This document shows positions 4,954-57,612 of a stretch of DNA of 64,000 bases, piece after piece. The stretch comes from Haliotis rubra. Taxonomy: Eukaryota. Position 1 is the stretch's first letter. The number at the start of each line of letters is the position of its first letter. The DNA lies in contig NW_025766092.1 of NCBI RefSeq assembly GCF_003918875.1, positions 806,001 through 870,000 of the forward strand, given 5' to 3'. Position numbers and translations under genes: made by a program. The notes under the pieces are model-generated. The model was not told where the DNA came from. It did not search any database and worked only from the letters and a program-made list of their open reading frames with translations.

Positions 4954-6119
4954 ATAAATGACCCTGTCGTTGATCTCTAAATATCTATACATAGGCCATT
5001 CATCCTTGCATAAAACACTCCTCTTTCAGATCAGCTAGTAAATCTGGATCCAGCAAATATACACATATTCATCATGTTTTTTTATTATCTGTAGAACATG
5101 AGCTGCAGAGTATTGACAAACATCAATTTGAAGTGACCTTGATTTAAGCCATGGATGATTTTCAGCCATGTGAGAAGGTAGAACACACTTGTGACTGCAG
5201 ATGTTGGCCTTCCATTGTTCCAATACAAAAAAGAAAAATCTGTTCTGATACAGTCACCAGTGTTAGAAAACAGAAAAATCATGTATTCCAATACATTTCA
5301 ATATTAAAGAGCGAATTGTGAAAAATAGTGTATTGATATAATATAGAAGTGAAGATTAATCTGAATTGTTGTATCACAATGATACAACTTGTACACGTGT
5401 GCGTCTATAATTATAGTTAGACTGATATCAAAGATGTAATCCTTAAAACCACATTGCCAAACAATGTACATATTGGTGGCTAAACATACAATATTGCACT
5501 TTGACATTATTGAATCTGAATAATGGTAAAATAAATGTGTATTTTGCCAAAACATTGCTTGCATTGTCCAATGGCATTATTGTGATGTCTTGGTAAATAG
5601 GAGTGAAAATGGAAAGTATTAAATCTCCTAATACACCTTGATTTTACTGGTGATGTCATACAATTCATGAAATGTCTACTGCCATGCTAGGAACTAGCTA
5701 TAACTAGCTGTCTCTTCCAATGCCCTTCTTTAAACTCCAGAGTGCGGTGTCCTTCTTGGAGTGAGTAATGTGACACATTTTCAGGATTCTCAACCTTTTC
5801 TCTTCATGCAATTTCTAACCATAAATTTCCTTTCAAGGAAAAAGTGCTATGAAAGCAGCCAGGAAGCCTCTCCATCTTGAAAAGCTTGATAAATCTTTCA
5901 AAATTATCATGGTCTTCTGTGAACAGTTTCTTTTCTCTGCCACCATGTTCCATGTTGTAGACCATCCATTCCTAAAGCTCCCAGCCTAGCTAATCCTGCT
6001 GCTACTCCTTGGTCTACAAGCTTCTCTTGTGGGCAGCCATGATACACATAGTATCAGTAGCTGATGGCCACCAGAACAGGATTTCCTGTTGACAGAACCC
6101 AGAACAAGCCAGTTATTCC

Positions 6120-6674
6120 TCAGCCATAGTTTGATGCTGTGGGATCTATAGGTGGTGTCAAGTGGTTGAGAACTCGAACAGGACTAAACTTATCACGAAG
6201 CCTTTTCTCAGGAGTAAAATTATTGTTCCTTTCAAATGTGAAATGACTCTCATTGGTGAGCACAGAATCTGGTGTTGCTAACGCTGTCCTGTTGCTTTCA
6301 CTAGCGGTCTCAAAACCACACAAACTGTCCGTGGAAGAATAGCTCCACCGGTCTGCCAAAAAGAGCTTGGGAGACTTGTGGGGGGTTAGCTGGGAGATAC
6401 AGGCACTTAGTTTGGCTTGAGCGTTAACTGTTGCTGGAACATAGCAGTCCATGGGATCATCTAAAGCGGTATCAAAACTCCCTGATCTACTGCTACGCTG
6501 TGATGGTTCACCATCATCGTCATCATCATCACTAGATTCACCTTCTGTACAGTGATTGTCCTCAAAGGCATAGTTTGTGGCTTGACCTTCAGATCCAGTT
6601 ATCACTATCTGGGGTTTAGCGCCACTGGAAGCAGCTAACTCAGCCATGAACTGGTAAATATAACGATACTCATC
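6120..6674 (-). CDS. RPTP terminal coding exon: DEYRYIYQFMAEL followed by a ~170-aa Ser/acidic low-complexity tail and TGA
   Basis: ttttcag acceptor; EYRYIY closes D2; continues through the 175-aa ORF 6120..6647. Confidence 0.9.
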   Translation of the reverse strand, partial: DEYRYIYQFMAELAASSGAKPQIVITGSEGQATNYAFEDNHCTEGESSDDDDDDGEPSQRSSRSGSFDTALDDPMDCYVPATVNAQAKLSACISQLTPHKSPKLFLADRWSYSSTDSLCGFETASESNRTALATPDSVLTNESHFTFERNNNFTPEKRLRDKFSPVRVLNHLTPPIDPTASNYG

Positions 6675-7293: not shown

Positions 7294-7429
7294 AACATTT
7301 GGCACAAGTTGGGGTCTGTTTCGTTTGATGAGCCTTACAGCGTTGAAGATGTCCACCTCACCATCCGTCCGCAGCTGTTCCGAGCAGATGTTGATGCCGC
7401 AGTAGATGCCAATCCTACAGGAACCATCT
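7294..7429 (-). CDS. RPTP D2 exon: (K)DGSCRIGIYCGINICSEQLRTDGEVDIFNAVRLIKRNRPQLVPNV
   Basis: 136 nt; VDIF.AVR..RP motif; acag/gtaag. Confidence 0.95.
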
Positions 7430-7516
7430 CTGTGGGAACAAGAATACACACATATAAGATAATCACCTATGCAGTCTTTGTGTAATGATGCTAGCTGCTG
7501 ATACAAAACACAGGCA

Positions 7517-8620
7517 TTAACAGGGGTTGTATCATGTTATTAACAGGGGTTTTTTTCTGGTTACTAACAGGGATTGTATCATGTTATTAACAGGGATTGT
7601 TTCATGTTATTTACAGGGATTATATCATGTTATTAACAGGGATTATATCATGTTATTAACAAGGATTGTATCATGTTATTAACAGGGATTATATCATGTT
7701 ATTGACAGGGATTGTATCATGTTATTAACAGGGATTATATCATGTTATTAACAGGGATTGTATCATGTTATTAACAGGGGTTTATCATGTTATTAACAGG
7801 GATTATATCATGTTATTGACAGGGATTGTATCATGTTATCAACAGGGATTGTATCATGTTATTAACAGGGATTGTATCATGTTATTAACAGGGATTGTAT
7901 CATGTTATTAACAGGGATTGTATCATGTTACTAACAGGGATTGTATCATGTTATTAACAGGGATTGTTTCATGTTATTTACAGGGATTATATCATGTTAT
8001 TAACAGGGATTATATCATGTTATTAACAGGGATTGTATCATGTTATTAACAGGGATTGTATCATGTTATTAACAGGGATTGTATCATGTTATTAACAGGG
8101 ATTATATCATGTTATTAACAGGGATTGTATCATGTTATTAACAGGGGTTTATCATGTTATAAACAGGGATTATATCATGTTATTGATGAGGATTGTATCA
8201 TGTTATCAACAGGATTGTATCATGTTATTAACAGGGATTGTATCATGTTATTAACAGGGATTTATCATGTTATTAACAGGGATTATATCATGTTATTGAC
8301 AGGGATTGTATCATGTTATTAACAGGGATTATATCATGTTATTGACAGGGATTGTATCATGTTATTAACAGGGATTGTATCATGTTATTAACAGGAATTA
8401 TATCATGTTATTAACAGGGATTGTATCATGTTATTAACAGGGATTATGATCAAGTTATTAACAGGGATTATGATCAAGTTATTAACATGGGATTATATCA
8501 TGTTTTTAACAGGGATTGTTTCATGTTATTAACAGGGATTGTATCATGTTATTAACAGGGATTATATCATGTTATTAACAGGGATTATATCATGTTACTG
8601 ACAGGGATTGTATCATGCAT
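7517..8620. repeat. 23-bp minisatellite (aacagggattgtatcatgttatt)n
   Basis: Visible tandem array, ~48 units. Confidence 0.97.
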
Positions 8621-9220: not shown

Positions 9221-9332
9221 TGATTCAGGACACATCAATCTACTCAATCTTGAACTAATCACCTACACCACTTTTCATCCATCAACCAAACCAACAAAGT
9301 AAATAATGCACAAAGCAACTTGCTTTTTCAAA

Positions 9333-9775
9333 AGCAAGAGTGCTGATCTAGAGATGACCTACTTGGGCATGACACTGATCGGGTTCATGGGTTCTTCAAG
9401 GCAAGAGTGCTGATCTAGAGATGACCTACTTGGGCATGACACTGATCGGGTTCATGGGTTCTTCAAGGCAAGAGTGCTGATCTAGAGATGACCTGCTTGG
9501 GCATGACACTGATCGGGTTCATGGGTTCTTAAAAGCAAGAGTGCTGATCTAGAGATGACCTACTTGGACATGACACAGATTGGGTTCATGGGTTCTTCAA
9601 GGCAAGAGTGCTGATCTAGAGATGACCTACATGGACATGACACAGATTGGGTTCATGGGTACTTAAAGGAAAGGATGCTGATGACCTACATGGACATGAC
9701 ACAGATTGGGTTCATGGGTTCTTAAAGGAAAGGATGATGATGACCTACTTGGACATGACACAGATTGGGTTCATA
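9333..9775. repeat. ~67-bp tandem repeat copying the 3' end and donor site of exon 9749-9924
   Basis: About 6 extra copies of gacctac(t/a)tgg(g/a)catgacac..gggttcat. Confidence 0.92.
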
Positions 9776-9924
9776 GGGTTGGTCTTCTTCTGCCATTGGT
9801 CAGCACTGTTCATGACGTAGGTCAGTGACTTGGCCGACACATGGATGCGGGATCGGCTACTGCTGCCTGTGATCTGGAACATCTTCACCACCAGGTCATC
9901 ACTAGAGGGCGCTTTACTTGTAGT
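9749..9924 (-). CDS. RPTP D2 exon: TTSKAPSSDDLVVKMFQITGSSSRSRIHVSAKSLTYVMNSADQWQKKTNPMNPICVMS(K)
   Basis: 176 nt; ends in phase 2 at the P-loop, like the D1 counterpart; gcag/gtagg. Confidence 0.88.
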
Positions 9925-10525
9925 CTGCCAATCACAAGATAACATTTACAGACAATGATATAAGCAACTTGAAGAATTTTGGCTATATCCTTTAAATTGT
10001 TTGGGATTCAATTTTCTGAAAGACAAGGAATTTTTGTGCCTATATCCCATTAAATTTTCTATGGTAGTCTTCCATCCAAAGGCCATTGTAGACTCTCAGT
10101 CTCCAGTTTGGTCACCATTCAAGCACAGATAAGCTTTTTCCAGACTGTAAATTAGTCTGGGACAAACAATCCAGTGATTGATGTTGTGGGCAAGAATGCA
10201 CACCATTGGGATACCCTGACATGCAATCCCCAAGCCTGACCACCCAATTCATTTCACAACTCTATGACAGGCTAAGTTGCAGGGATGAATTCTAACCCAG
10301 AAAGCCAATGGGGAATACTGCTTTTTGGAAAAGGAAAGGTGCATTTTGTAATTTGTTGTATTTGTAACAAGTTTACTTTTGGTATGCTTTAGTACGCTTC
10401 AAGCAAAAGTTGGAGTACAAGCCACTGCACCACTCTCTGGATCTGCTTCAGAACACATCCGCTCATGGAATTACCACAATTGAAAACCTTTTTGTGACTT
10501 ATCACTGTGATAAAAGCTTACTTAC

Positions 10526-22641: not shown

Positions 22642-22791
22642 CTGGAACTCTCTGTCCAGCTTCTGTTGTTTTGGTTCAGCGTTCTTGCTGTACGACCTGA
22701 GATATGTAGCGGGAAGTAGTGTCCCCGGACACACTGTCCAGCCGGTCTGTATGTACATGGCCACAGTGTCGTAGATGAGGCGATACTGGCC
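22642..22791 (-). CDS. RPTP D1 end / linker exon: GQYRLIYDTVAMYIQTGWTVCPGTLLPATYLRSYSKNAEPKQQKLDREFQ
   Basis: 150 nt; QYxxIY and LDREF motifs; acag/gtgca. Confidence 0.92.
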
Positions 22792-23205
22792 CTGTAAAGA
22801 ACATAACAAGATCATGTCAGTCTCTGAGACAGGTAGTTGGAAGAAGTGTCTTTGGCCACAGTGTCATAGATGAGGCGATACTGGCCCTGTAAAGAACATA
22901 ACAAGATCATGTCAGTCTCTGAGACAGGTAGTTGGAAGAAGTGTCTTTGGCCACAGTGTCGTAGATGAGGCGATACTGGCCCTGTAAAGAACATAACAAG
23001 ATCATGTCAGTCTCTGAGACAGGTAGTTGGAAGAAGTGTCTTTGGCCACAGTGTCGTAGATGAGGCGATACTGGCCCTGTAAAGAACATAACAAGATCAT
23101 GTCAGTCTCTGAGACAGGTAGGAAGAAGTTGGAAGAAGTGTCTTTGGCCACAGTAAAGAACATAGATGATGTCCTCTGAGACAGGTAGTTGGAAGAAGTG
23201 TCTAC
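22757..23205. repeat. 95-bp tandem repeat copying the acceptor and first ~11 codons of exon 22642-22791
   Basis: 4 near-identical units plus a broken fifth; ORF track repeats CSLQGQYRLIYDTVA. Confidence 0.95.
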
Positions 23206-23909: not shown

Positions 23910-24061
23910 CAGTGTCCTGACCATATTTTTGCGGAAGCGCCGTAGGTGCAGCACACAGCTGTAGATGTCTACCCTCTCCTCAGCCTCAATCTGCTTCAGA
24001 CAATAGTCCACAGCGATGAACACTGCTGTCCTGCCACACTGCTGTCCTGCCACCTCCGCAC
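23910..24061 (-). CDS. RPTP D1 P-loop exon: (R)CGGGRTAVFIAVDYCLKQIEAEERVDIYSCVLHLRRFRKNMVRTL; frameshifted as assembled by a 16-nt tandem duplication
   Basis: gtag/gtaag boundaries; 152 nt = 136 in-frame nt + a second copy of cactgctgtcctgcca (24021-24036, 24037-24052). Confidence 0.9.
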
Positions 24062-27964: not shown

Positions 27965-30900
27965 TCAATAGCTCACTACTAGGAACAAGACTTGAATAAT
28001 TGTAGAGGACATGAACACAAGCTAGTGATGCTAGTATTGGTCAATAGCGCACTACTAGGAACAAGACTTGAATAATTGTAGAGGACATGAACACAAGCTA
28101 GTGATGCTAGTATTGGTCAATAGCACACTACTAGGAACAAGACTTGAATAATTGTAGAGGACATGAACACAAGCTAGTGATGCTAGTATTGGTCAATAGC
28201 ACTACTAGTGCAAGACTACTAGGAACAAGAATTGAATAATTGTAGAGGACATGAACACAAGCTAGTGATGCTAGTATTGGTCAATAGCACTACTAGGAAC
28301 AAGACTTGAATAATTGTAGAGGACATGAACACAAGCTAGTGATGCTAGTATTGGTCAATAGTGCACTACTAGGAACAAGACTTGAATAATTGTAGAGGAC
28401 ATGAACACAAGCTAGTGATGCTAGTATTGGTCAATAGTGCATTACTAGGAACAAGACTTGAATAATTGTAGAGGACATGAACACAAGCTAGTGATGCTAG
28501 TATTGGTCAATAGCACACTACTAGGAACAAGACTTGAATAATTGTAGAGGACATGAACACAAGCTAGTGATGCTAGTATTGGTCAATAGCGCACTACTAG
28601 GAACAAGACTTGAATAATTGTAGAGGACATGAACACAAGCTAGTGATGCTAGTATTGGTCAATAGCGCACTACTAGGAACAAGACTTGAATAATTGTAGA
28701 GGACATGAACACAAGCTAGTGATGCTAGTATTGGTCAATAAGCGCACTACTAGGAACAAGACTTGAAATAATTGTAGAGGACATGAACACAAGCTAGTGA
28801 TGCTAGTATTGGTCAATAAGCACTACTAGGAACAAGACTTGAATAATTGTAGAGGACATGAACACAAGCTAGTGATGCTTGTATTTGTCAATAGCACACT
28901 ACTAGGAACAAGACTGGAATAATTGTAGAGGACATGAACACAAGCTAGTGATGCTAGTATTGGTCAATAGCTAGCACTACTAGGAACAAGACTTGAATAA
29001 TTGTAGAGGACATGAACACAAGCTAGTGATGCTAGTATTGGTCAATAGCACAAGCTAGTAGGAACAAGACTTGAATAATTGTAGAGGACATGAACACAAG
29101 CTAGTGATGCTAGTATTGGTCAATAGCATGCACTACTAGGAACAAGACTTGAATAATTGTAGAGGACATGAACACAAGCTAGTGATGCTAGTATTGGTCA
29201 ATAGCGCACTACTAGGAACAAGACTTGAATAATTGTAGAGGACATGAACACAAGCTAGTGATGCTAGTATTGGTCAATAAGCGTGCTACTAAGAACAAGA
29301 CTTGACTACTAGGAACAAGACTTGAATAATTGTAGAGGACATGAACACAAGCTAGTGATGCTAGTATTGGTCAATAGCGCACTACTAGGAACAAGACTTG
29401 AATAATTGTAGAGGACATGAACACAAGCTAGTGATGCTAGTATTGGTCAATAGCGTACTACTAGGAACAAGACTTGAATAATTGTAGAGGACATGAACAC
29501 AAGCTAGTGATGCTAGTATTGGTCAATAGTGCACTACTAGGAACAAGACTTGAATAATTGTAGAGGACATGAACACAAGCTAGTGATGCTAGTATTGGTC
29601 AATAGCGCACTACTAGGAACAAGACTTGAATAATTGTAGAGGACATGAACACAAGCTAGTGATGCTAGTATTGGTCAATAGCGCACTACTAGGAACAAGA
29701 CTTGAATAATTGTAGAGGACATGAACACAAGCTAGTGATGCTAGTATTGGTCAATAGCGCACTACTAGGAACAAGACTTGAATAATTGTAGAGGACATGA
29801 ACACAAGCTAGTGATGCTAGTATTGGTCAATAGCACACTACTAGGAACAAGACTTGAATAATTGTAGAGGACATGAACACAAGCTAGTGATGCTAGTATT
29901 GGTCAATAGCACTACTAGGAACAAGACTTGAATAATTGTAGAGGACATGAACACAAGCTAGTGATGCTAGTATTGGTCAATAGCGCACTACTAGGAACAA
30001 GACTTGAATAATTGTAGAGGACATGAACACAAGCTAGTGATGCTTGTATTTGTCAATAGCGCACTACTAGGAACAAGACTTGAATAATTGTAGAGGACAT
30101 GAACACAAGCTAGTGATGCTAGTATTGGTCAATAGCGCACTACTAGGAACAAGACTTGAATAATTGTAGAGGACATGAACACAAGCTAGTGATGCTAGTA
30201 TTGGTCAATAGTGCACTACTAGGAACAAGACTTGAATAATTGTAGAAGACATGAACACAAGCTAGTGATGCTAGTATTGGTCAATAGCGCACTACTAGGA
30301 ACAAGACTTGAATAATTGTAGAGGACATGAACACAAGCTAGTGATGCTAGTATTGGTCAATAGCGCACTACTAGGAACAAGACTTGAATAATTGTAGAGG
30401 ACATGAACACAAGCTAGTGATGCTAGTATTGGTCAATAGCGCACTACTAGGAACAAGACTTGAATAATTGTAGAGGACATGAACACAAGCTAAATAGCGC
30501 ACTACTATGCTAGTATTGGTCAATACAAGCTAGTGATACTAGGAACAAGACAAGACTGAATAATTGTAGAGGACATGAACACAAGCTAGTGATGCTAGTA
30601 TTGGTCAATACAAGCTAGTGATACTAGGAACAAGACTTGAATAATTGTAGAGGACATGAACACAAGCTAGTGATGCTAGTATTGGTCAATAGCGCACTTA
30701 CTAGGAACAAGACTTGAATAATTGTAGAGGACATGAACACAAGCTAGTGATGCTAGTATTGGTCAATAGCACTAATAGGAACAAGACTTGAATAATTGTA
30801 GAGGACATGAACACAAGCTAGTGATGCTAGTATTGGTCAATAACGCACTACTAGGAACAAGACTTGAATAATTGTAGAGGACATGAACACAAGCTAGTGA

Positions 30901-31055
30901 TGCTAGAATATTGGTCAATAGCGCACTACTAGGAACAAGACTTGAATAATTGTAGAGGACATGAACACAAGCTGGTGATGCTAGTATTGGTCAATAACGC
31001 ACTACTAGGAACAAGACTTGAATAATTGTAGAGGACATGAACACAAGCTAGGGAT
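27965..31055. repeat. 76-bp satellite, ~40 units
   Basis: Unit cactactaggaacaagacttgaataattgtagaggacatgaacacaagctagtgatgctagtattggtcaatagcg. Confidence 0.98.
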
Positions 31056-31264
31056 GCTGTCCTGGTTCTTCCAGTACGCAGCTGAACACAACACTGATGA
31101 AGGATATGTAAGTCTCCAGTGCTGGACCAGGAACCTGACTAAAATATTCCACTTTTGTGTGATCTGTTAGTATTCCTATCATAACTATTAACGTATGTCA
31201 TTAACAGTGCAATACACCTACACAATGCAAAGAGTGCAATATAATACACCTAAACAATCAGTAT

Positions 31265-39712: not shown

Positions 39713-40082
39713 NNNNNNNNNNNNNNNNNNNNNNNNNNNNNNNNNNNNNNNNNNNNNNNNNNNNNNNNNNNNNNNNNNNNNNNNNNNNNNNNNNNNNNNN
39801 NNNNNNNNNNNNNNNNNNNNNNNNNNNNNNNNNNNNNNNNNNNNNNNNNNNNNNNNNNNNNNNNNNNNNNNNNNNNNNNNNNNNNNNNNNNNNNNNNNNN
39901 NNNNNNNNNNNNNNNNNNNNNNNNNNNNNNNNNNNNNNNNNNNNNNNNNNNNNNNNNNNNNNNNNNNNNNNNNNNNNNNNNNNNNNNNNNNNNNNNNNNN
40001 NNNNNNNNNNNNNNNNNNNNNNNNNNNNNNNNNNNNNNNNNNNNNNNNNNNNNNNNNNNNNNNNNNNNNNNNNNNNNNNNNN
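39713..40082. other. Assembly gap (370 N) inside an RPTP intron
   Basis: Run of N; the flanking exons join in frame, so no exon is needed in the gap. Confidence 0.99.
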
Positions 40083-41822: not shown

Positions 41823-41928
41823 CTCTGGATCCATTCCCTGCAACAGCTTCCTCTCTGGAGTACTGTTTTACATCTCAAACTCTCCTATTACTAACACAGC
41901 ACAGAATGTCCCTCATACCTTAAAAGTC

Positions 41929-41960
<32 letters not shown>

Positions 41961-42740
41961 TGCATTTGTTAAAGCGCCTAATGTCCAACCAGTGCTGCTC
42001 AGTGGCGCTGTGCAGAGAAAGTGGAGAAACTAGTAGGTAGCTAGAAAAAAGATGAGTTTTTAGTTGGCTCCTAAATGCTTCCAGGGAAGATACTGATCTC
42101 AGTTCAACTGGCAGAGAGTTCCACAAAGCTGGTGCAGCAGCACTGAAAGCTCTGTCTGCCATGGATGTTTTTGTAGCTGTCATTTTCAGGCTGCCTCTTT
42201 TCTCAGACCTCAAGACACGATTTGGACGATAGATTTCAATGATGTCTTTGAGGTAAGCTGGTGAATGGATGTCATAGAGTGTTGAGTAGGTGATGCAAAT
42301 TATTTTGCACTGTATTCTCCTCTTTACTGGGAGCCAGTGCAACGACCTCAGCACAGGGGTGATGTGTTCCTGACATTTTGTCCTGTATATGATCCTGGCA
42401 GCTCTGTTTTGTACAAGCTGGAGATGTTGGATTGCTGCTGCTCCTGACACGAGAGAGTTACAGTAGTCTAGGCGTGAGATGATGTATGACTGAAGTAAAA
42501 GTTTGGTTGTGTCAATGCCCAAATAGCGGCGGATTTTTCCTATTCGGCGGAGATGAAAGGTTGCTGATCTTGCTGCTGTTAGGGCTTGTGATTCTGGTGA
42601 CATTGAAGAACGGAAAAACAACACCAAGATTCTTCACCTGGGGCACAGGGCAGATAGACTGATCTCCAACTGTGAGACTACACTTGCCTATTTTGCGAAG
42701 CTTCATGTGAAAGCAAGTTTGGCTGAATATCTGCATTCAA
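41929..42740 (-). mobile_element. 5'-truncated L2/CR1-group LINE: C-terminal part of ORF2, 3' UTR and (TAT)n tail
   Basis: VKNLGV, SRLDYCNSL, LHWLPVKRRI, RAFSAAAPALWNSLP motifs; microsatellite tail. Confidence 0.9.
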
Positions 42741-54899: not shown

Positions 54900-56084
54900 G
54901 CCTGTATTTTTTGTTTTCAAAACTTTCCCTCACAGACAGTTACAGAAACATGCGCTGAGGCAGGAGTGTTATGTAACATACATTTTATTGATTAGCTACT
55001 TTGCTGTTAATCAAAGATATGATTGCTAATTCAGAAATTGTCACAAAAAGATGTTTCAGTAGCGGCTTACAGTGTTAATTAGTTTTGCATAAACATCTTG
55101 CTTTAGGAAAATAGTATTTTAGATTGAGATAGTCACATGAAGTAAGAAGAAAATGGCAGCATTTTCTAAATAAATGATGAGTGACAATGGCGTGAGCTGT
55201 CGTATTTATGGAACACTACATCCCCCGAAGCTGCTAAAACTAAAGGGAAGAGGTTCACATAACAGGAGATCAAATATAAAAAATAAAAGTATTTGAATGT
55301 CCTTTTGCATTTGGATTTACATCAAGTTATTAGTTGGAATATACAGCAATGAAACACCTTCTCAACTTCAGGGTAAGCATAAGTGTAAAACTGGAAGAAA
55401 AATAACAACGGTTTTGAGAATAAACAATAATTGTATATAAATTACTAGGTTTCTTGTTTTGTGTGCAAATCATCAACTTCAGATAAGCTGATCCACAGTC
55501 CAAGACACAATTGCAGAGGGACTTGGGGTTGAATACAGTCTTCATTTTACATTTAGTTACTACCTGCTGTACGAATATTCAAACAGTAATTCCTGCATGT
55601 GAACACCTAGTTTGATAGGCAGTGAGAAGTGCTGTACAATGAAATATGAAGCAAATGGATGACAATTGTTAGCTGTGAATAAGCTCGAAAGCTCATCAAA
55701 AAGACACACAAAAACTTGCATCCCACACTCAGTCTCTCTGTATTGTGATACAGTAAAATCAATAATACCGGTAATATTAGGACAACAGTTCAAATTTACA
55801 AGATCATTAGATTAGTTGAAGGAAATATGTATCATATTTCATTCATCAACAATATTATTTTCCATGCATGATTGTTGATAACATTTCATCACAACAACAG
55901 GACATTTTCTGACTGATTAGTCTGTATGAATAAAAGATGGAAGATAATCATTTGTGCGCTTCTTGGGGAATTCCCGTGTCAGTAACTCAATCTAAGGACT
56001 CTCTTTACAGCAGGTCTCACCTCAGTGTCATGTGTGGCTACAACACTATTGGGTCTGCTGCCCTGATTCACTGTCAATACAAAC

Positions 56085-57425
56085 CATGAGATATTGTCCA
56101 CACACTCCCTGACAGATTGTCCACAAACTTCCTGACAGATTGTCCATACACTCCCTGATGGATTGTCCATACACTCCCTGACAGATTGTCCATATACTCC
56201 CTGGCATATTGTCCACACACTCCCTGACATATTGTCCACACACTCTGAAATTATATAATTGTCAACACACGCTTACATATTGTTCATACACTCCCTGACA
56301 TATTGTCCACACATTCCCTGACATATTGTCCACACACTCTGAAATTATATAATTGTCAACACACACTGATATATTGTTCATACACTCCCTGACATATTGT
56401 CCATACACTCTGACATATTGTCCACACACTCCCTGACATATTGTCCATACACTCTGACATATTGTCCACACACTCCCTGACATATTGTCCACAAACTCCC
56501 TGACATATTGTATATACACTCCCTGACAGATTGTTCACACACAATCTGAAAATATATAATTGTCCATGCACACCCTGACATATTGTCCACAATCTCCCTG
56601 ACAGATTGTCCACACACACTCTGAAATTATATAATTGTCAACACTCTCTGACATATTGTCCATACACTCTCTGACATATTGTCCACACACTCCCTGACAG
56701 ATTGTCCACACACACTCTGAAATTATATAATTGTCAACACTCTCTGACATATTGTCGACCCTCCGTGACATCTTGTCCATACACTCTCTGACATATTGTC
56801 CTTACACACCCTGAAATATTGTCCACATGCTCCTTGACATATTGTCCATACACTCTCTGACATATTGTCCATGCACACCCTGACATATTGTCCATATGCT
56901 CCCTGACATTTTGTCCATACGCTCCCTGACATTTTGTCCATGAGCTCCCTGACATATTGTCCATACACTCCCTGACATTTTGTCCATACGCTCCCTGACA
57001 TTTTGTCCATACACTCCCTGACATTTTGTCCATACACTCCCTGACATATTGTCCATGCGCTCCCTGACATATTGTCCATACTCCCTGACATTTTGTCCAT
57101 ACGCTCCCTGACATTTTGTCCATACACTCCCTGACATTTTGTCCATACACTCCCTGACATATTGTCCATACGCTCCCTGACATATTGTCCATACGCTCCC
57201 TGACATTTTGTCCATACGCTCCCTGACATTTTGTCCATACACTCCCTGACATATTGTCCAGACACTTTCTGACATATTGTCCATGCACACCCTGACATAT
57301 TGTCCATACACTCCCTGACATTTTGTCCATACGCTCACTGACATTTGTCCATAAGCTCCCTGACAATATCATCCTTACACATTGTGACATATTGTCCAAA
57401 TACTCCCTGACATGTTGTCCATATA
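56085..57425. repeat. 23-bp minisatellite (ctccctgacatattgtccataca)n
   Basis: Visible array. Confidence 0.97.
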
Positions 57426-57612
57426 CAACCTGTCATATTGTTGCTGCACACCCAATTGTGGAGACCGATGATCATTCTGTTGATCTCTGGATTGTCTGAT
57501 CCAGACCCAATTATTTACAGACTGCCGCCATAACAGCCTGACATAAAGCTTGTATAGGACTACGTCCTGTCCAAGTACACGTACACAGTAACAGTATTGC
57601 TGAGTGTTATGT

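What the first reader, a model, noticed from the sequence alone, without database searches (positions are those of the whole stretch)
6120..6614. C-terminal tail has a calcineurin PxIxIT motif (PQIVIT) and three CDK-type sites
Seen: directly after D2 is KPQIVITGSE (PQIVIT at 6597-6614), then an acidic tract (ESSDDDDDD) and TPHK, TPEK, SPVR in a low-complexity ~170-aa tail. Established: PxIxIT is the calcineurin docking motif (the optimised peptide is PVIVIT), S/T-P-x-K/R is the CDK consensus, and most RPTPs end shortly after D2. Inference: a catalytically weakened tyrosine phosphatase that recruits the Ca2+-dependent Ser/Thr phosphatase, an unusual signalling module. Short motifs can also arise by chance.
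Basis: partly seen in the sequence, partly recalled or inferred. Interest (0 to 1): 0.75.

Follow-up and report, generated by a model that had tools for sequence, protein, structure and literature searches.

The report
Conserved calcineurin-docking motif in phosphatase tail
The tail of an abalone two-domain tyrosine phosphatase carries a near-perfect docking motif for the calcium-activated phosphatase calcineurin that is kept across molluscs, so it is very probably functional, but binding has not been tested.

Summary
The last coding exon (minus strand, 6674..6123) encodes the end of domain D2, then K-PQIVIT-GSEG, an acidic run and a ~160-residue tail. Spliced RNA-derived contigs cover it, and it is under strong purifying selection between two abalones (dN/dS 0.09).

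The PxIxIT reading is much better supported than a single match would allow. At the aligned site, 32 of 35 lophotrochozoan orthologues fit the published calcineurin consensus.
- Three gastropod orders have PQIVIT.
- Pteriomorph bivalves have PKIVITGP, identical over eight residues to an engineered super-binder.
- Cephalopods have PKIVVT or PTIVVT.
- The position before the motif is never acidic.

It is the most conserved island of a tail that AlphaFold2 models as disordered in both abalone and oyster.

The three CDK-type sites are not conserved. TPHK is TPHM in a sister abalone, and TPEK and SPVR occur only in Haliotis. Other conserved islands are S[FY]xTAx[DE], which looks like a phospho-FFAT motif, and QL[S/T]PH. 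Bivalves have QLQIP at the second, which fits LxVP.

Caveats:
- No binding data exist.
- The motif starts three residues after the last helix.
- This assembly has a frame-breaking 16-nt duplication in an upstream D1 exon, which I could not check with reads.

Other readers of this scan left notes on this gene, but none on calcineurin.

The parts
6120..6674 (-). Last coding exon. It holds the end of the D2 helix (DEYRYIYQFMAEL), the tail of about 160 residues, and the stop at 6122-6120.
   Evidence: Translation. Acceptor AG at 6676-6675. RNA-derived contigs cover it and join it to 7294. tblastn with the H. rufescens orthologue gives 92% identity. dN/dS is 0.094.
6597..6614 (-). PQIVIT, the core of the PxIxIT calcineurin-docking consensus.
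   Evidence: At the aligned site, 32 of 35 orthologues fit the consensus and 16 of 35 are strict PxIxIT.
6585..6617 (-). Extended motif K-PQIVIT-GSEG, positions -1 to 10.
   Evidence: Position profile: position -1 is never acidic, G7 occurs in 16/33, P8 in 19/33 and E9 in 11/33. Flank preferences come from PMC6728138.
6513..6539 (-). Acidic/serine tract ESSDDDDDD. Its length varies between abalones, and other gastropods have LSTD[DE]S here.
6459..6479 (-). SFDTALD, a conserved island S[FY]xTAx[DE] behind the acidic tract, resembling a phospho-FFAT (VAP-binding) core.
   Evidence: Present at the aligned site in 20 of 36 tails. Motif definition from PMC7705450.
6369..6392 (-). Pteriomorph bivalves have QLQIP here.
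   Evidence: The K is M in H. rufescens.
6321..6338 (-). SSTDSL, a fourth conserved serine-rich island.
6174..6215 (-). TPEK and SPVR, S/T-P-x-K/R sites found only in Haliotis.
7294..7429 (-). Penultimate exon: the rest of the D2 P-loop (..DGSCRIG..) up to ..RPQLVPNV. The donor GT is at 7293-7292.
   Evidence: A contig from X1 covers exactly this exon and runs on into both neighbouring exons. Pfam Y_phosphatase match.
9748..9927 (-). D2 exon ending ..PMNPICVMSK. Ser stands where the catalytic Cys would be.
   Evidence: The loose end of the X1 contig reads PMNPICVMSK joined to 7429.
24020..24051 (-). 16-nt unit GGCAGGACAGCAGTGT present twice in the D1 P-loop exon. It breaks the frame after HCRCGGGRTAV.
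   Evidence: The orthologue reads HCRCGGGRTAVFIAVDY with one copy.

Best explanation
The gene encodes a lophotrochozoan two-domain tyrosine phosphatase of the RPTP alpha/epsilon build, with an atypical D1 and a D2 that lacks the catalytic cysteine. Its C-terminal tail is an intrinsically disordered regulatory region made of short conserved islands separated by variable linkers.

The first island, P-[QK]-I-V-I-T-G, is an ancient PxIxIT-type docking site. It would bind as a beta strand in the substrate-docking groove of the calcineurin A subunit. Because the sequence is close to the strongest known ligands, the tail would hold calcineurin fairly stably, as an anchor, rather than touch it briefly.

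Docked calcineurin would then remove phosphates from the serine/threonine clusters further along the same tail. Candidates are the acidic Ser tract, the Thr of S[FY]xTAx[DE] and the S/T-P of QL[S/T]PH. Alternatively it could act on proteins brought near by the phosphatase domains.

Shown here: the sequence, expression and splicing, selection, conservation, predicted disorder, and the fit to published specificity data. Inferred: calcineurin binding, and which sites it acts on.
For: 1. The motif is real and lies in mRNA.

2. Conservation at the aligned site is strong:
- PQIVIT in caeno-, veti- and patellogastropods
- PKIVITGP in pteriomorph bivalves
- PKIVVT or PTIVVT in Solemya and cephalopods
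- PQIIVS in a chiton
- PRILVT in the annelid Owenia
- Across 33 sequences: P1 33/33, I3 27/33, I/V/L5 32/33 and T/S6 30/33, while position 2 varies and V predominates at position 4 (21/33). This is the pattern expected for PxIxIT.

3. It is the best-conserved stretch of the tail.

4. The flanks fit measured calcineurin preferences. Position -1 is never acidic, G7-P8 is common and E9 is frequent. In PMC6728138, acidic -1 kills binding, PKIVIT outperforms PVIVIT, and HPKIVITGPD is among the strongest variants.

5. The closest natural ligands are strong binders: PQIVID in mouse TRESK and PKIIITG in A238L.

6. AlphaFold2 places the motif just after the last D2 helix, in a segment with pLDDT below 50 and no strand packed on the domains. 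This holds for both abalone and oyster.

7. The tail exon has dN/dS 0.094 at dS 0.38 between two abalones.

8. Bivalves and one cephalopod carry Lx[VLI]P, the second calcineurin motif, about 60-70 residues downstream (consensus from 10.1101/632547).

9. Calcineurin A and B are expressed in all abalone tissues examined (PMC7151749).
Against: - There is no binding or dephosphorylation data for any member of this family.
- The motif begins only 3 residues after the last predicted helix, so access to the calcineurin groove could be hindered. Published motif screens require clear disorder.
- Any beta-strand docking site would show the same alternate-position conservation.
- The abalone tail has no LxVP under the stricter consensus. 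It has only LTPP near the C-terminus, and that is Haliotis-specific.
- Heterobranch gastropods and heterodont bivalves have degenerate versions (PDIVVS, PKITLT), and tardigrade and nematode orthologues lack the tail.
- I did not verify the docking groove of molluscan calcineurin A. I assumed it from the general conservation of calcineurin.
- In this assembly a 16-nt duplication upstream would stop translation before the tail.
Confidence: 0.55

Rival explanations
1. The conserved strand P-x-I-V-I-T is a docking or structural element for something other than calcineurin. It could be a beta-strand addition to another domain, a SUMO-type hydrophobic-core interaction, a dimer contact, or a contact with the protein's own phosphatase domains. 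On this view its match to PxIxIT is a by-product of what a short amphipathic strand looks like.
For: - The motif sits 3 residues after the last D2 helix, which is unusual for a free linear motif.
- Any strand docking gives conservation at positions 1, 3 and 5.
- No experiment links this family to calcineurin.
Against: - AlphaFold2 does not pack the strand on D1 or D2 in two orthologues, although the domains reach pLDDT above 90.
- The invariant Pro at position 1, T/S at 6, G7-P8 and the absence of an acidic residue at -1 match calcineurin specificity in detail. By my recollection of SUMO-interaction motifs (not checked here), these features are not required for them.
- Bivalves and one cephalopod add an LxVP-type site downstream.
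Confidence: 0.28
2. The tail is mainly a target of cyclin-dependent kinases through the three S/T-P-x-K/R sites, as the first reader suggested alongside the calcineurin idea.
For: The three sites exist in the window. The S/T-P of QL[S/T]PH is conserved in gastropods.
Against: - TPHK is TPHM in H. rufescens and SPHL, SPHM or SPYM in other gastropods, so the basic residue that defines the CDK consensus is not kept.
- TPEK and SPVR align with nothing outside Haliotis.
Confidence: 0.07
3. In this particular genome the gene is broken. The 16-nt duplication in the D1 P-loop exon shifts the frame, so the tail is transcribed but not translated, and the motif is a relic here.
For: The duplication is in the assembly. 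With one copy the frame reads HCRCGGGRTAVFIA, as in the orthologue.
Against: - The tail has dN/dS 0.09 between abalones.
- 7 of 9 listed coding differences among sequencing runs are synonymous.
- The gene is transcribed and correctly spliced at its 3' end.
- A short tandem duplication is a common assembly or single-haplotype feature. It was not checked with reads.
Confidence: 0.15
4. PQIVIT is a chance match with no function.
For: Short motifs occur by chance. The ELM-like pattern occurs 0.7 times per 1000 residues in outgroup phosphatases.
Against: It is conserved at one aligned site across gastropods, bivalves, cephalopods, a chiton and an annelid, while the surrounding tail is only 10-40% conserved. 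There are 0 strict matches in 77,199 outgroup residues.
Confidence: 0.02

Closest known systems
PxIxIT calcineurin-docking motifs of high affinity: engineered PVIVIT/PKIVIT peptides, ASFV A238L (PKIIITG), mouse TRESK/K2P18.1 (PQIVID)
   Same: The core is the same. Abalone PQIVIT equals TRESK's PQIVI plus the canonical T. Oyster and mussel PKIVITGP equals the engineered PKIVITGP over eight residues. Position -1 is non-acidic and position 9 is often acidic, as preferred.
   Different: The host protein is a tyrosine phosphatase, not a channel, transcription factor or viral inhibitor. The motif abuts a folded domain. Binding is untested.
NFAT-type calcineurin substrates (PxIxIT, then phosphoserine/SP clusters, then LxVP)
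   Same: The order of elements matches in the bivalve orthologues and one cephalopod: PKIVITGP (PKIVVT in the cephalopod), then a Ser/acidic stretch, then Lx[VLI]P about 60-70 residues downstream. All lie in a disordered region.
   Different: The abalone and other gastropods have QL[S/T]PH instead of LxVP. NFAT motifs are weak binders (PRIEIT), whereas this one is near-optimal, which points to anchoring rather than transient substrate contact.
Receptor tyrosine phosphatases alpha/epsilon (R4 type) and other tandem-domain RPTPs
   Same: The D1-D2 fold matches, with TM-score 0.85 to PTP sigma, LAR, alpha and epsilon. Some orthologues have a short glycosylated ectodomain plus a membrane span, while others start without one, like the receptor and cytosolic forms of PTP epsilon.
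   Different: - FHD in place of WPD
- RTLGQ in place of QTxxQ
- The KNRY tyrosine is lost
- D2 has Cys replaced by Ser
- A tail of 160-500 residues follows D2, whereas vertebrate relatives end soon after D2
- None of 66 outgroup phosphatases has PxIxIT
Kv2.1 potassium channel: phospho-FFAT binding to VAP, released by calcineurin
   Same: Both have a disordered C-terminal tail with an S/T-containing FFAT-like core behind an acidic/Ser tract (PMC7705450). In Kv2.1, calcineurin-dependent dephosphorylation releases the channel from ER VAPs (PMC6380216).
   Different: The resemblance here rests on a 7-residue pattern only. In abalone, position 3 is acidic rather than aromatic. VAP binding and phosphorylation were not tested.

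Membership tests
PxIxIT calcineurin-docking motif | Sequence fits P[^PG][ILVF][^PG][ILVF][^PG] (Wigington et al.), or strict P-x-I-x-I-T | tested here: met
   PQIVIT at 6614..6597. The consensus is quoted. 32 of 35 orthologues fit it and 16 of 35 are strict.
PxIxIT calcineurin-docking motif | Flanks compatible with binding (no acidic residue at -1; G/P at 7-8 and acidic or phospho at 9 are favourable) | tested here: met
   K at -1, and G7, S8, E9 in the window. 0 of 33 orthologues are acidic at -1. Preferences come from PMC6728138.
PxIxIT calcineurin-docking motif | Lies in an accessible, disordered, cytosolic region | tested here: inconclusive
   AlphaFold2 gives pLDDT below 50 from residue 627 (abalone) or 635 (oyster) and no packed strand. 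However, the motif starts only 3 residues after the last helix. A cytosolic location follows from its position after the phosphatase domains.
PxIxIT calcineurin-docking motif | Conserved in orthologues as an island | tested here: met
   It is the most conserved stretch of the tail across molluscs.
PxIxIT calcineurin-docking motif | Binds calcineurin A through the beta11-beta14 groove; binding is lost in the groove (NIR) mutant and competed by PVIVIT | not testable with these tools
   No complex prediction or binding assay is available. The calcineurin sequence of molluscs was not fetched.
LxVP calcineurin motif | Lx[VLI]P in a disordered region | tested here: not met
   There is none in the abalone tail. 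Only LTPP (6161..6150) fits the broader pattern that I recalled from the ELM resource (L.[LIVAPM]P, not checked against it here), and it is Haliotis-specific. Pteriomorph bivalves have QLQIP and a cephalopod has LHLP at a conserved island.
CDK consensus sites | S/T-P-x-K/R kept in orthologues | tested here: not met
   TPHK becomes TPHM in H. rufescens and SPHL or SPHM elsewhere. TPEK and SPVR occur only in Haliotis.
Classical tandem-domain receptor tyrosine phosphatase | Two Y_phosphatase domains in the D1-D2 arrangement | tested here: met
   Pfam PF00102 matches on exon pieces. Foldseek TM-score 0.85 to PTP sigma, LAR, alpha and epsilon tandem structures.
Classical tandem-domain receptor tyrosine phosphatase | Membrane span and ectodomain | tested here: inconclusive
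   The 5' exons (residues 1-99 of the orthologue) are outside the window. The H. rufescens protein has no hydrophobic span. The Patella, Mytilus, Octopus, Lingula and Owenia proteins have one near the N-terminus.
Classical tandem-domain receptor tyrosine phosphatase | Catalytic motifs of D1 (KNRY, WPD, HCX5R, QTxxQ) | tested here: not met
   HCX5R is present and the Asp is kept, but FHD replaces WPD, RTLGQ replaces QTxxQ, and the KNRY Tyr is replaced. In the window the P-loop exon also carries a frame-breaking duplication.
Phospho-FFAT (VAP-binding) motif | Core x-[FY]-x-[S/T]-A-x-[D/E] behind an acidic tract | tested here: met
   SFDTALD follows ESSDDDDDD..SSRSG. 20 of 36 tails fit at the aligned site, including SFFTALD in cephalopods. 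Definition. This is a pattern match only.
Phospho-FFAT (VAP-binding) motif | Phosphorylation at position 4 and binding to the MSP domain of VAP | not testable with these tools
   No data are available.

The most novel reading that the evidence does not exclude
The tail is a calcium-operated switch for where a tyrosine phosphatase sits in the cell. A high-affinity calcineurin anchor (PQIVIT or PKIVITGP) is placed about 40 residues upstream of a phospho-FFAT-type motif (S[FY]xTAx[DE]).

When phosphorylated, that motif would hold the phosphatase on VAP at the endoplasmic reticulum. A calcium rise would activate the pre-docked calcineurin, which would remove that phosphate and release the enzyme. 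This is the same logic as Kv2.1 declustering, but here it would couple Ser/Thr and Tyr phosphatase signalling in one molecule.

The two islands are retained together in most molluscan lineages. Both are degenerate or lost in heterobranchs and heterodonts.
Probability: 0.15. Interest if true: 0.8.

Novelty: new member of a known kind. Interest (0 to 1): 0.58.

Why it matters
Calcineurin finds its partners through short docking motifs, and only a limited set of partners is known, almost all from vertebrates and yeast. This would be a natural near-optimal PxIxIT, kept across the major molluscan classes. The bivalve version is identical to a peptide engineered to out-compete the drug FK506 in cells.

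It also sits on a tyrosine phosphatase, so it would physically couple calcium/Ser-Thr phosphatase signalling to tyrosine phosphatase signalling. It offers a ready test case for how strong natural docking sites are used, as an anchor rather than as a substrate. It also gives a first functional handle on an uncharacterised lophotrochozoan phosphatase family. Calcineurin is implicated in shell formation and immunity in abalone and pearl oyster, so a conserved partner is of practical interest there.

Tried and rejected
- **Exact-sequence look-up of the window's 175-residue tail ORF.** Nothing was on record.
- **Literature search for natural PQIVIT, PKIVIT, PRIIIT or PKIVVT.** It returned only the engineered PKIVIT peptide papers and unrelated hits.
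- **Literature search for PxIxIT together with tyrosine phosphatases.** It gave nothing on this family.
- **Earlier notes of this scan.** None mentions calcineurin or PxIxIT.
- **LxVP in the abalone tail.** There is no match to Lx[VLI]P.
- **CDK reading.** Rejected because the basic residue is not conserved.
- **Structural-strand reading.** Weakened but not excluded, because two AlphaFold2 models leave the motif unpacked.
- **SUMO-interaction reading.** Considered only from memory of that motif's form, and not tested.
- **Molluscan calcineurin A.** I did not fetch it to check its docking groove, because no allowed reference sequence was at hand.
- **Third word-index protein search.** Left unused.

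Full report
**What is there**

The finding lies in the last coding exon of a minus-strand gene. The exon runs from 6674, behind an AG at 6676-6675, to the stop at 6122-6120. It encodes DEYRYIYQFMAELAASSGAK-PQIVIT-GSEG, then ESSDDDDDD, SFDTALD, QLTPHKSPK, SSTDSL, FTPEK, FSPVR, and ends in SNYG.

Exon pieces upstream match Pfam Y_phosphatase twice over. tblastn with the Haliotis rufescens protein P0013 (789 aa) lays residues 100-789 on the window at 82-100% identity per exon. The window therefore comes from an abalone, which agrees with a note of this scan on another piece of the genome. The first 99 residues are encoded outside the window.

**Is the tail expressed as read?**

Yes. Two small runs (X1, X2) give contigs that cover exons only.
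- An X2 contig joins 7294 to 6674. The tool placed the joint at 6671/7293 with two letters between, which is explained by a synonymous GAT>GAC change at 6672.
- An X1 contig covers exactly the exon 7429..7294. It runs on at one end into DEY.. and at the other into ..PMNPICVMSK.
- Contigs 6149-6620 (X1) and 6098-6494 (X2) are unbroken, so there is no hidden intron in the tail.
- Of nine listed coding differences among the runs, seven are synonymous.

Against a genomic contig of a second abalone (L001), the exon has dN 0.036 and dS 0.38, a ratio of 0.094. The distal 121 codons give 0.107. The 3' UTR is only 75% identical. The whole tail is therefore under purifying selection.

**What protein is it?**

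A search of all protein representatives with the exon found six true relatives. A word search with the full-length Babylonia protein then found an orthologous family of about 750-1000 residues. The family occurs in gastropods, bivalves, cephalopods, a chiton, a brachiopod, an annelid, a bryozoan, tardigrades, a flatworm and nematodes. There is a large gap in score to vertebrate receptor phosphatases.

The AlphaFold2 model of the abalone orthologue matches solved tandem D1-D2 structures (PTP sigma, LAR, alpha, epsilon, CD45) with TM-score about 0.85.

Some orthologues have an N-terminal membrane span behind a short ectodomain with N-x-S/T sites (Patella, Mytilus, Octopus, Lingula, Owenia). Others, including the annotated abalone protein, begin MGK..LL with no span. 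This recalls the receptor and cytosolic forms of PTP epsilon.

D1 is atypical:
- It keeps the P-loop Cys and Arg (HCRCGGGRTA) and the loop Asp.
- It reads FHD where WPD is expected and RTLGQ where QTxxQ is expected.
- It has lost the KNRY tyrosine.

D2 has Ser in place of the catalytic Cys (VMSKDGSCRIG). 'Catalytically weakened' is thus plausible but untested.

**The PxIxIT motif**

This is the core of the finding, and it holds up better than expected. In every orthologue the D2 helix (..EYxYxYxF..) is followed about 13 residues later by a proline-led hydrophobic strand.

| Lineage | Sequence at the aligned site |
|---|---|
| Caeno-, veti- and patellogastropods | PQIVIT |
| Pteriomorph bivalves | PKIVITGP |
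| Solemya and cephalopods | PKIVVT / PTIVVT |
| A chiton | PQIIVS |
| Owenia (annelid) | PRILVT |
| A distant relative of unknown species | PRIIIT |
| Heterobranch gastropods (degenerate) | PDIVVS, PEIIIS |
| Heterodont bivalves (degenerate) | PKITLT, PKLLLT |

Tardigrades and nematodes have no such tail. At the aligned site, 32 of 35 sequences fit the published loose consensus P[^PG][ILVF][^PG][ILVF][^PG] (10.1101/632547), and 16 are strict PxIxIT.

The position profile over 33 sequences is as follows:
- P1 33/33, I3 27/33, V4 21/33, I/V/L5 32/33, T/S6 30/33
- G7 16/33, P8 19/33, E9 11/33
- Position 2 is variable (K, Q, D, E..)
- Position -1 is never acidic

This is the pattern of a PxIxIT site, and it is the most conserved island of the tail. 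None of 66 outgroup phosphatases (77,199 residues) has a strict PxIxIT.

**Fit to measured specificity**

Nguyen et al. (PMC6728138) report the following:
- K or R at position 2 strengthens binding.
- PKIVIT beats the patented PVIVIT and even FK506 as an inhibitor in cells.
- Acidic residues at -1 abolish binding.
- Acidic or phosphorylated residues at position 9 help.
- HPKIVITGPD is among the strongest variants.

The oyster, mussel and scallop sequence ..DKPKIVITGPA.. equals that scaffold over eight residues. The abalone KPQIVITGSE differs from mouse TRESK's PQIVID only in carrying the canonical T. TRESK's motif is described as the highest-affinity natural calcineurin motif (PMC8547300). A238L of African swine fever virus, a calcineurin inhibitor, has PKIIITG (PMC2774854).

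Established knowledge is that substrate PxIxIT sites are usually weak. A near-optimal one therefore suggests anchoring or inhibition rather than brief substrate contact, which is an inference. Calcineurin A and B are expressed in all abalone tissues tested (PMC7151749).

**Accessibility**

AlphaFold2 with a 38-sequence family alignment models both domains at pLDDT above 90.
- In abalone the last helix ends at residue 625, the motif is at 629-634, and residues 627-789 are below 50.
- In oyster the helix ends at 628, the motif is at 631-636, and residues 635-842 are below 50.
- No strand is packed on D1 or D2 in either model.

This argues against a purely structural role. It leaves the caveat that the motif abuts the folded domain.

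**The rest of the tail**

The CDK reading fails. TPHK is TPHM in H. rufescens and SPHL, SPHM or SPYM in other gastropods. TPEK and SPVR are found only in Haliotis.

What is conserved is a set of islands:
- an acidic/serine tract (LSTD[DE]S; ESSDDDDDD in the window)
- S[FY]xTAx[DE], found in 20 of 36 tails, with SFFTALD in cephalopods
- QL[S/T]PH in gastropods. At this island pteriomorph bivalves have QLQIP and a cephalopod has LHLP. Both fit the LxVP consensus Lx[VLI]P for calcineurin's second docking site.
- SSTDS

The second island fits the phospho-FFAT definition (E1F2F3[S/T]4A5x6E7 behind an acidic tract; PMC7705450). Kv2.1 is released from VAP by calcineurin-dependent dephosphorylation of such a region (PMC6380216). 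I offer this only as the most novel reading that the data allow.

**Caveat on this genome**

The D1 P-loop exon contains the 16-nt unit GGCAGGACAGCAGTGT twice (24051..24020). With one copy it reads HCRCGGGRTAVFIA, as in the orthologue. With two copies the frame breaks. Another first-stage note flagged this. If the duplication is real and on both haplotypes, the tail would not be translated here. Strong selection on the tail and correct 3' splicing argue that it is recent, heterozygous or an assembly error. I could not check it with reads.

**Verdict**

- The calcineurin-docking interpretation is well supported by sequence evidence but unproven. I put about 0.55 on function as a calcineurin dock. 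A peptide binding in vitro is more likely than that.
- The CDK part is not supported.
- This is a new candidate member of a known motif class, on an uncharacterised protein family.

Noticed in passing
window 24020-24051 (minus strand): The 16-nt unit GGCAGGACAGCAGTGT is present twice in the D1 P-loop exon. One copy restores HCRCGGGRTAVFIA as in H. rufescens, while two copies shift the frame. It may be a real lesion, a single haplotype or an assembly error.
   Followed up: partly
window 22757-23205 and 9330-9780: Two intronic tandem arrays are built from exon ends of this gene. Units of about 95 nt repeat the acceptor and the first codons (GQYRLIYDTVA) of the exon at about 22791. Units of 67 nt repeat the last codons (PMNPICVMSK) and the donor of the exon ending at 9748. 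RNA contigs use the true exon end.
   Followed up: partly
window 6459-6479: SFDTALD behind an acidic/serine tract fits the phospho-FFAT (VAP-binding) core. The island S[FY]xTAx[DE] is kept in 20 of 36 orthologue tails, mostly the same lineages that keep a strict PxIxIT.
   Followed up: partly
orthologue tails (P0018, P0020, P0021, P0022, P0027, P0029, P0043): Pteriomorph bivalves have QLQIP and a cephalopod has LHLP, both fitting the calcineurin LxVP consensus. They sit at the island where gastropods have QL[S/T]PH, about 60-70 residues after the PxIxIT.
   Followed up: partly
orthologues P0014, P0029, P0040, P0049, P0051 versus P0003, P0013, P0020: The family is predicted in two forms. One has an N-terminal membrane span behind a short ectodomain with N-glycosylation sites. 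The other starts MGK..LL with no span. This is reminiscent of the receptor and cytosolic PTP epsilon isoforms.
   Followed up: partly
window 6513-6539: The poly-Asp run (GAT/GAC repeats) differs in length between abalones: DDDDDDGE here and DDDE-PP in two relatives. The reads tool skipped it as a repeat.
   Followed up: no
window 7516-8617, 27982-31140, 56000-57430: Long minisatellite arrays lie in introns of the gene, with a 23-nt period at 7516-8617 and a 76-nt period at about 28000-31100. There is an assembly gap of 370 N at 39713-40082.
   Followed up: no
window 41923-42633 (minus strand): A 237-residue open frame inside an intron ends in a poly-Ile run. It looks like the C-terminal part of a retroelement protein. 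It was not searched.
   Followed up: no
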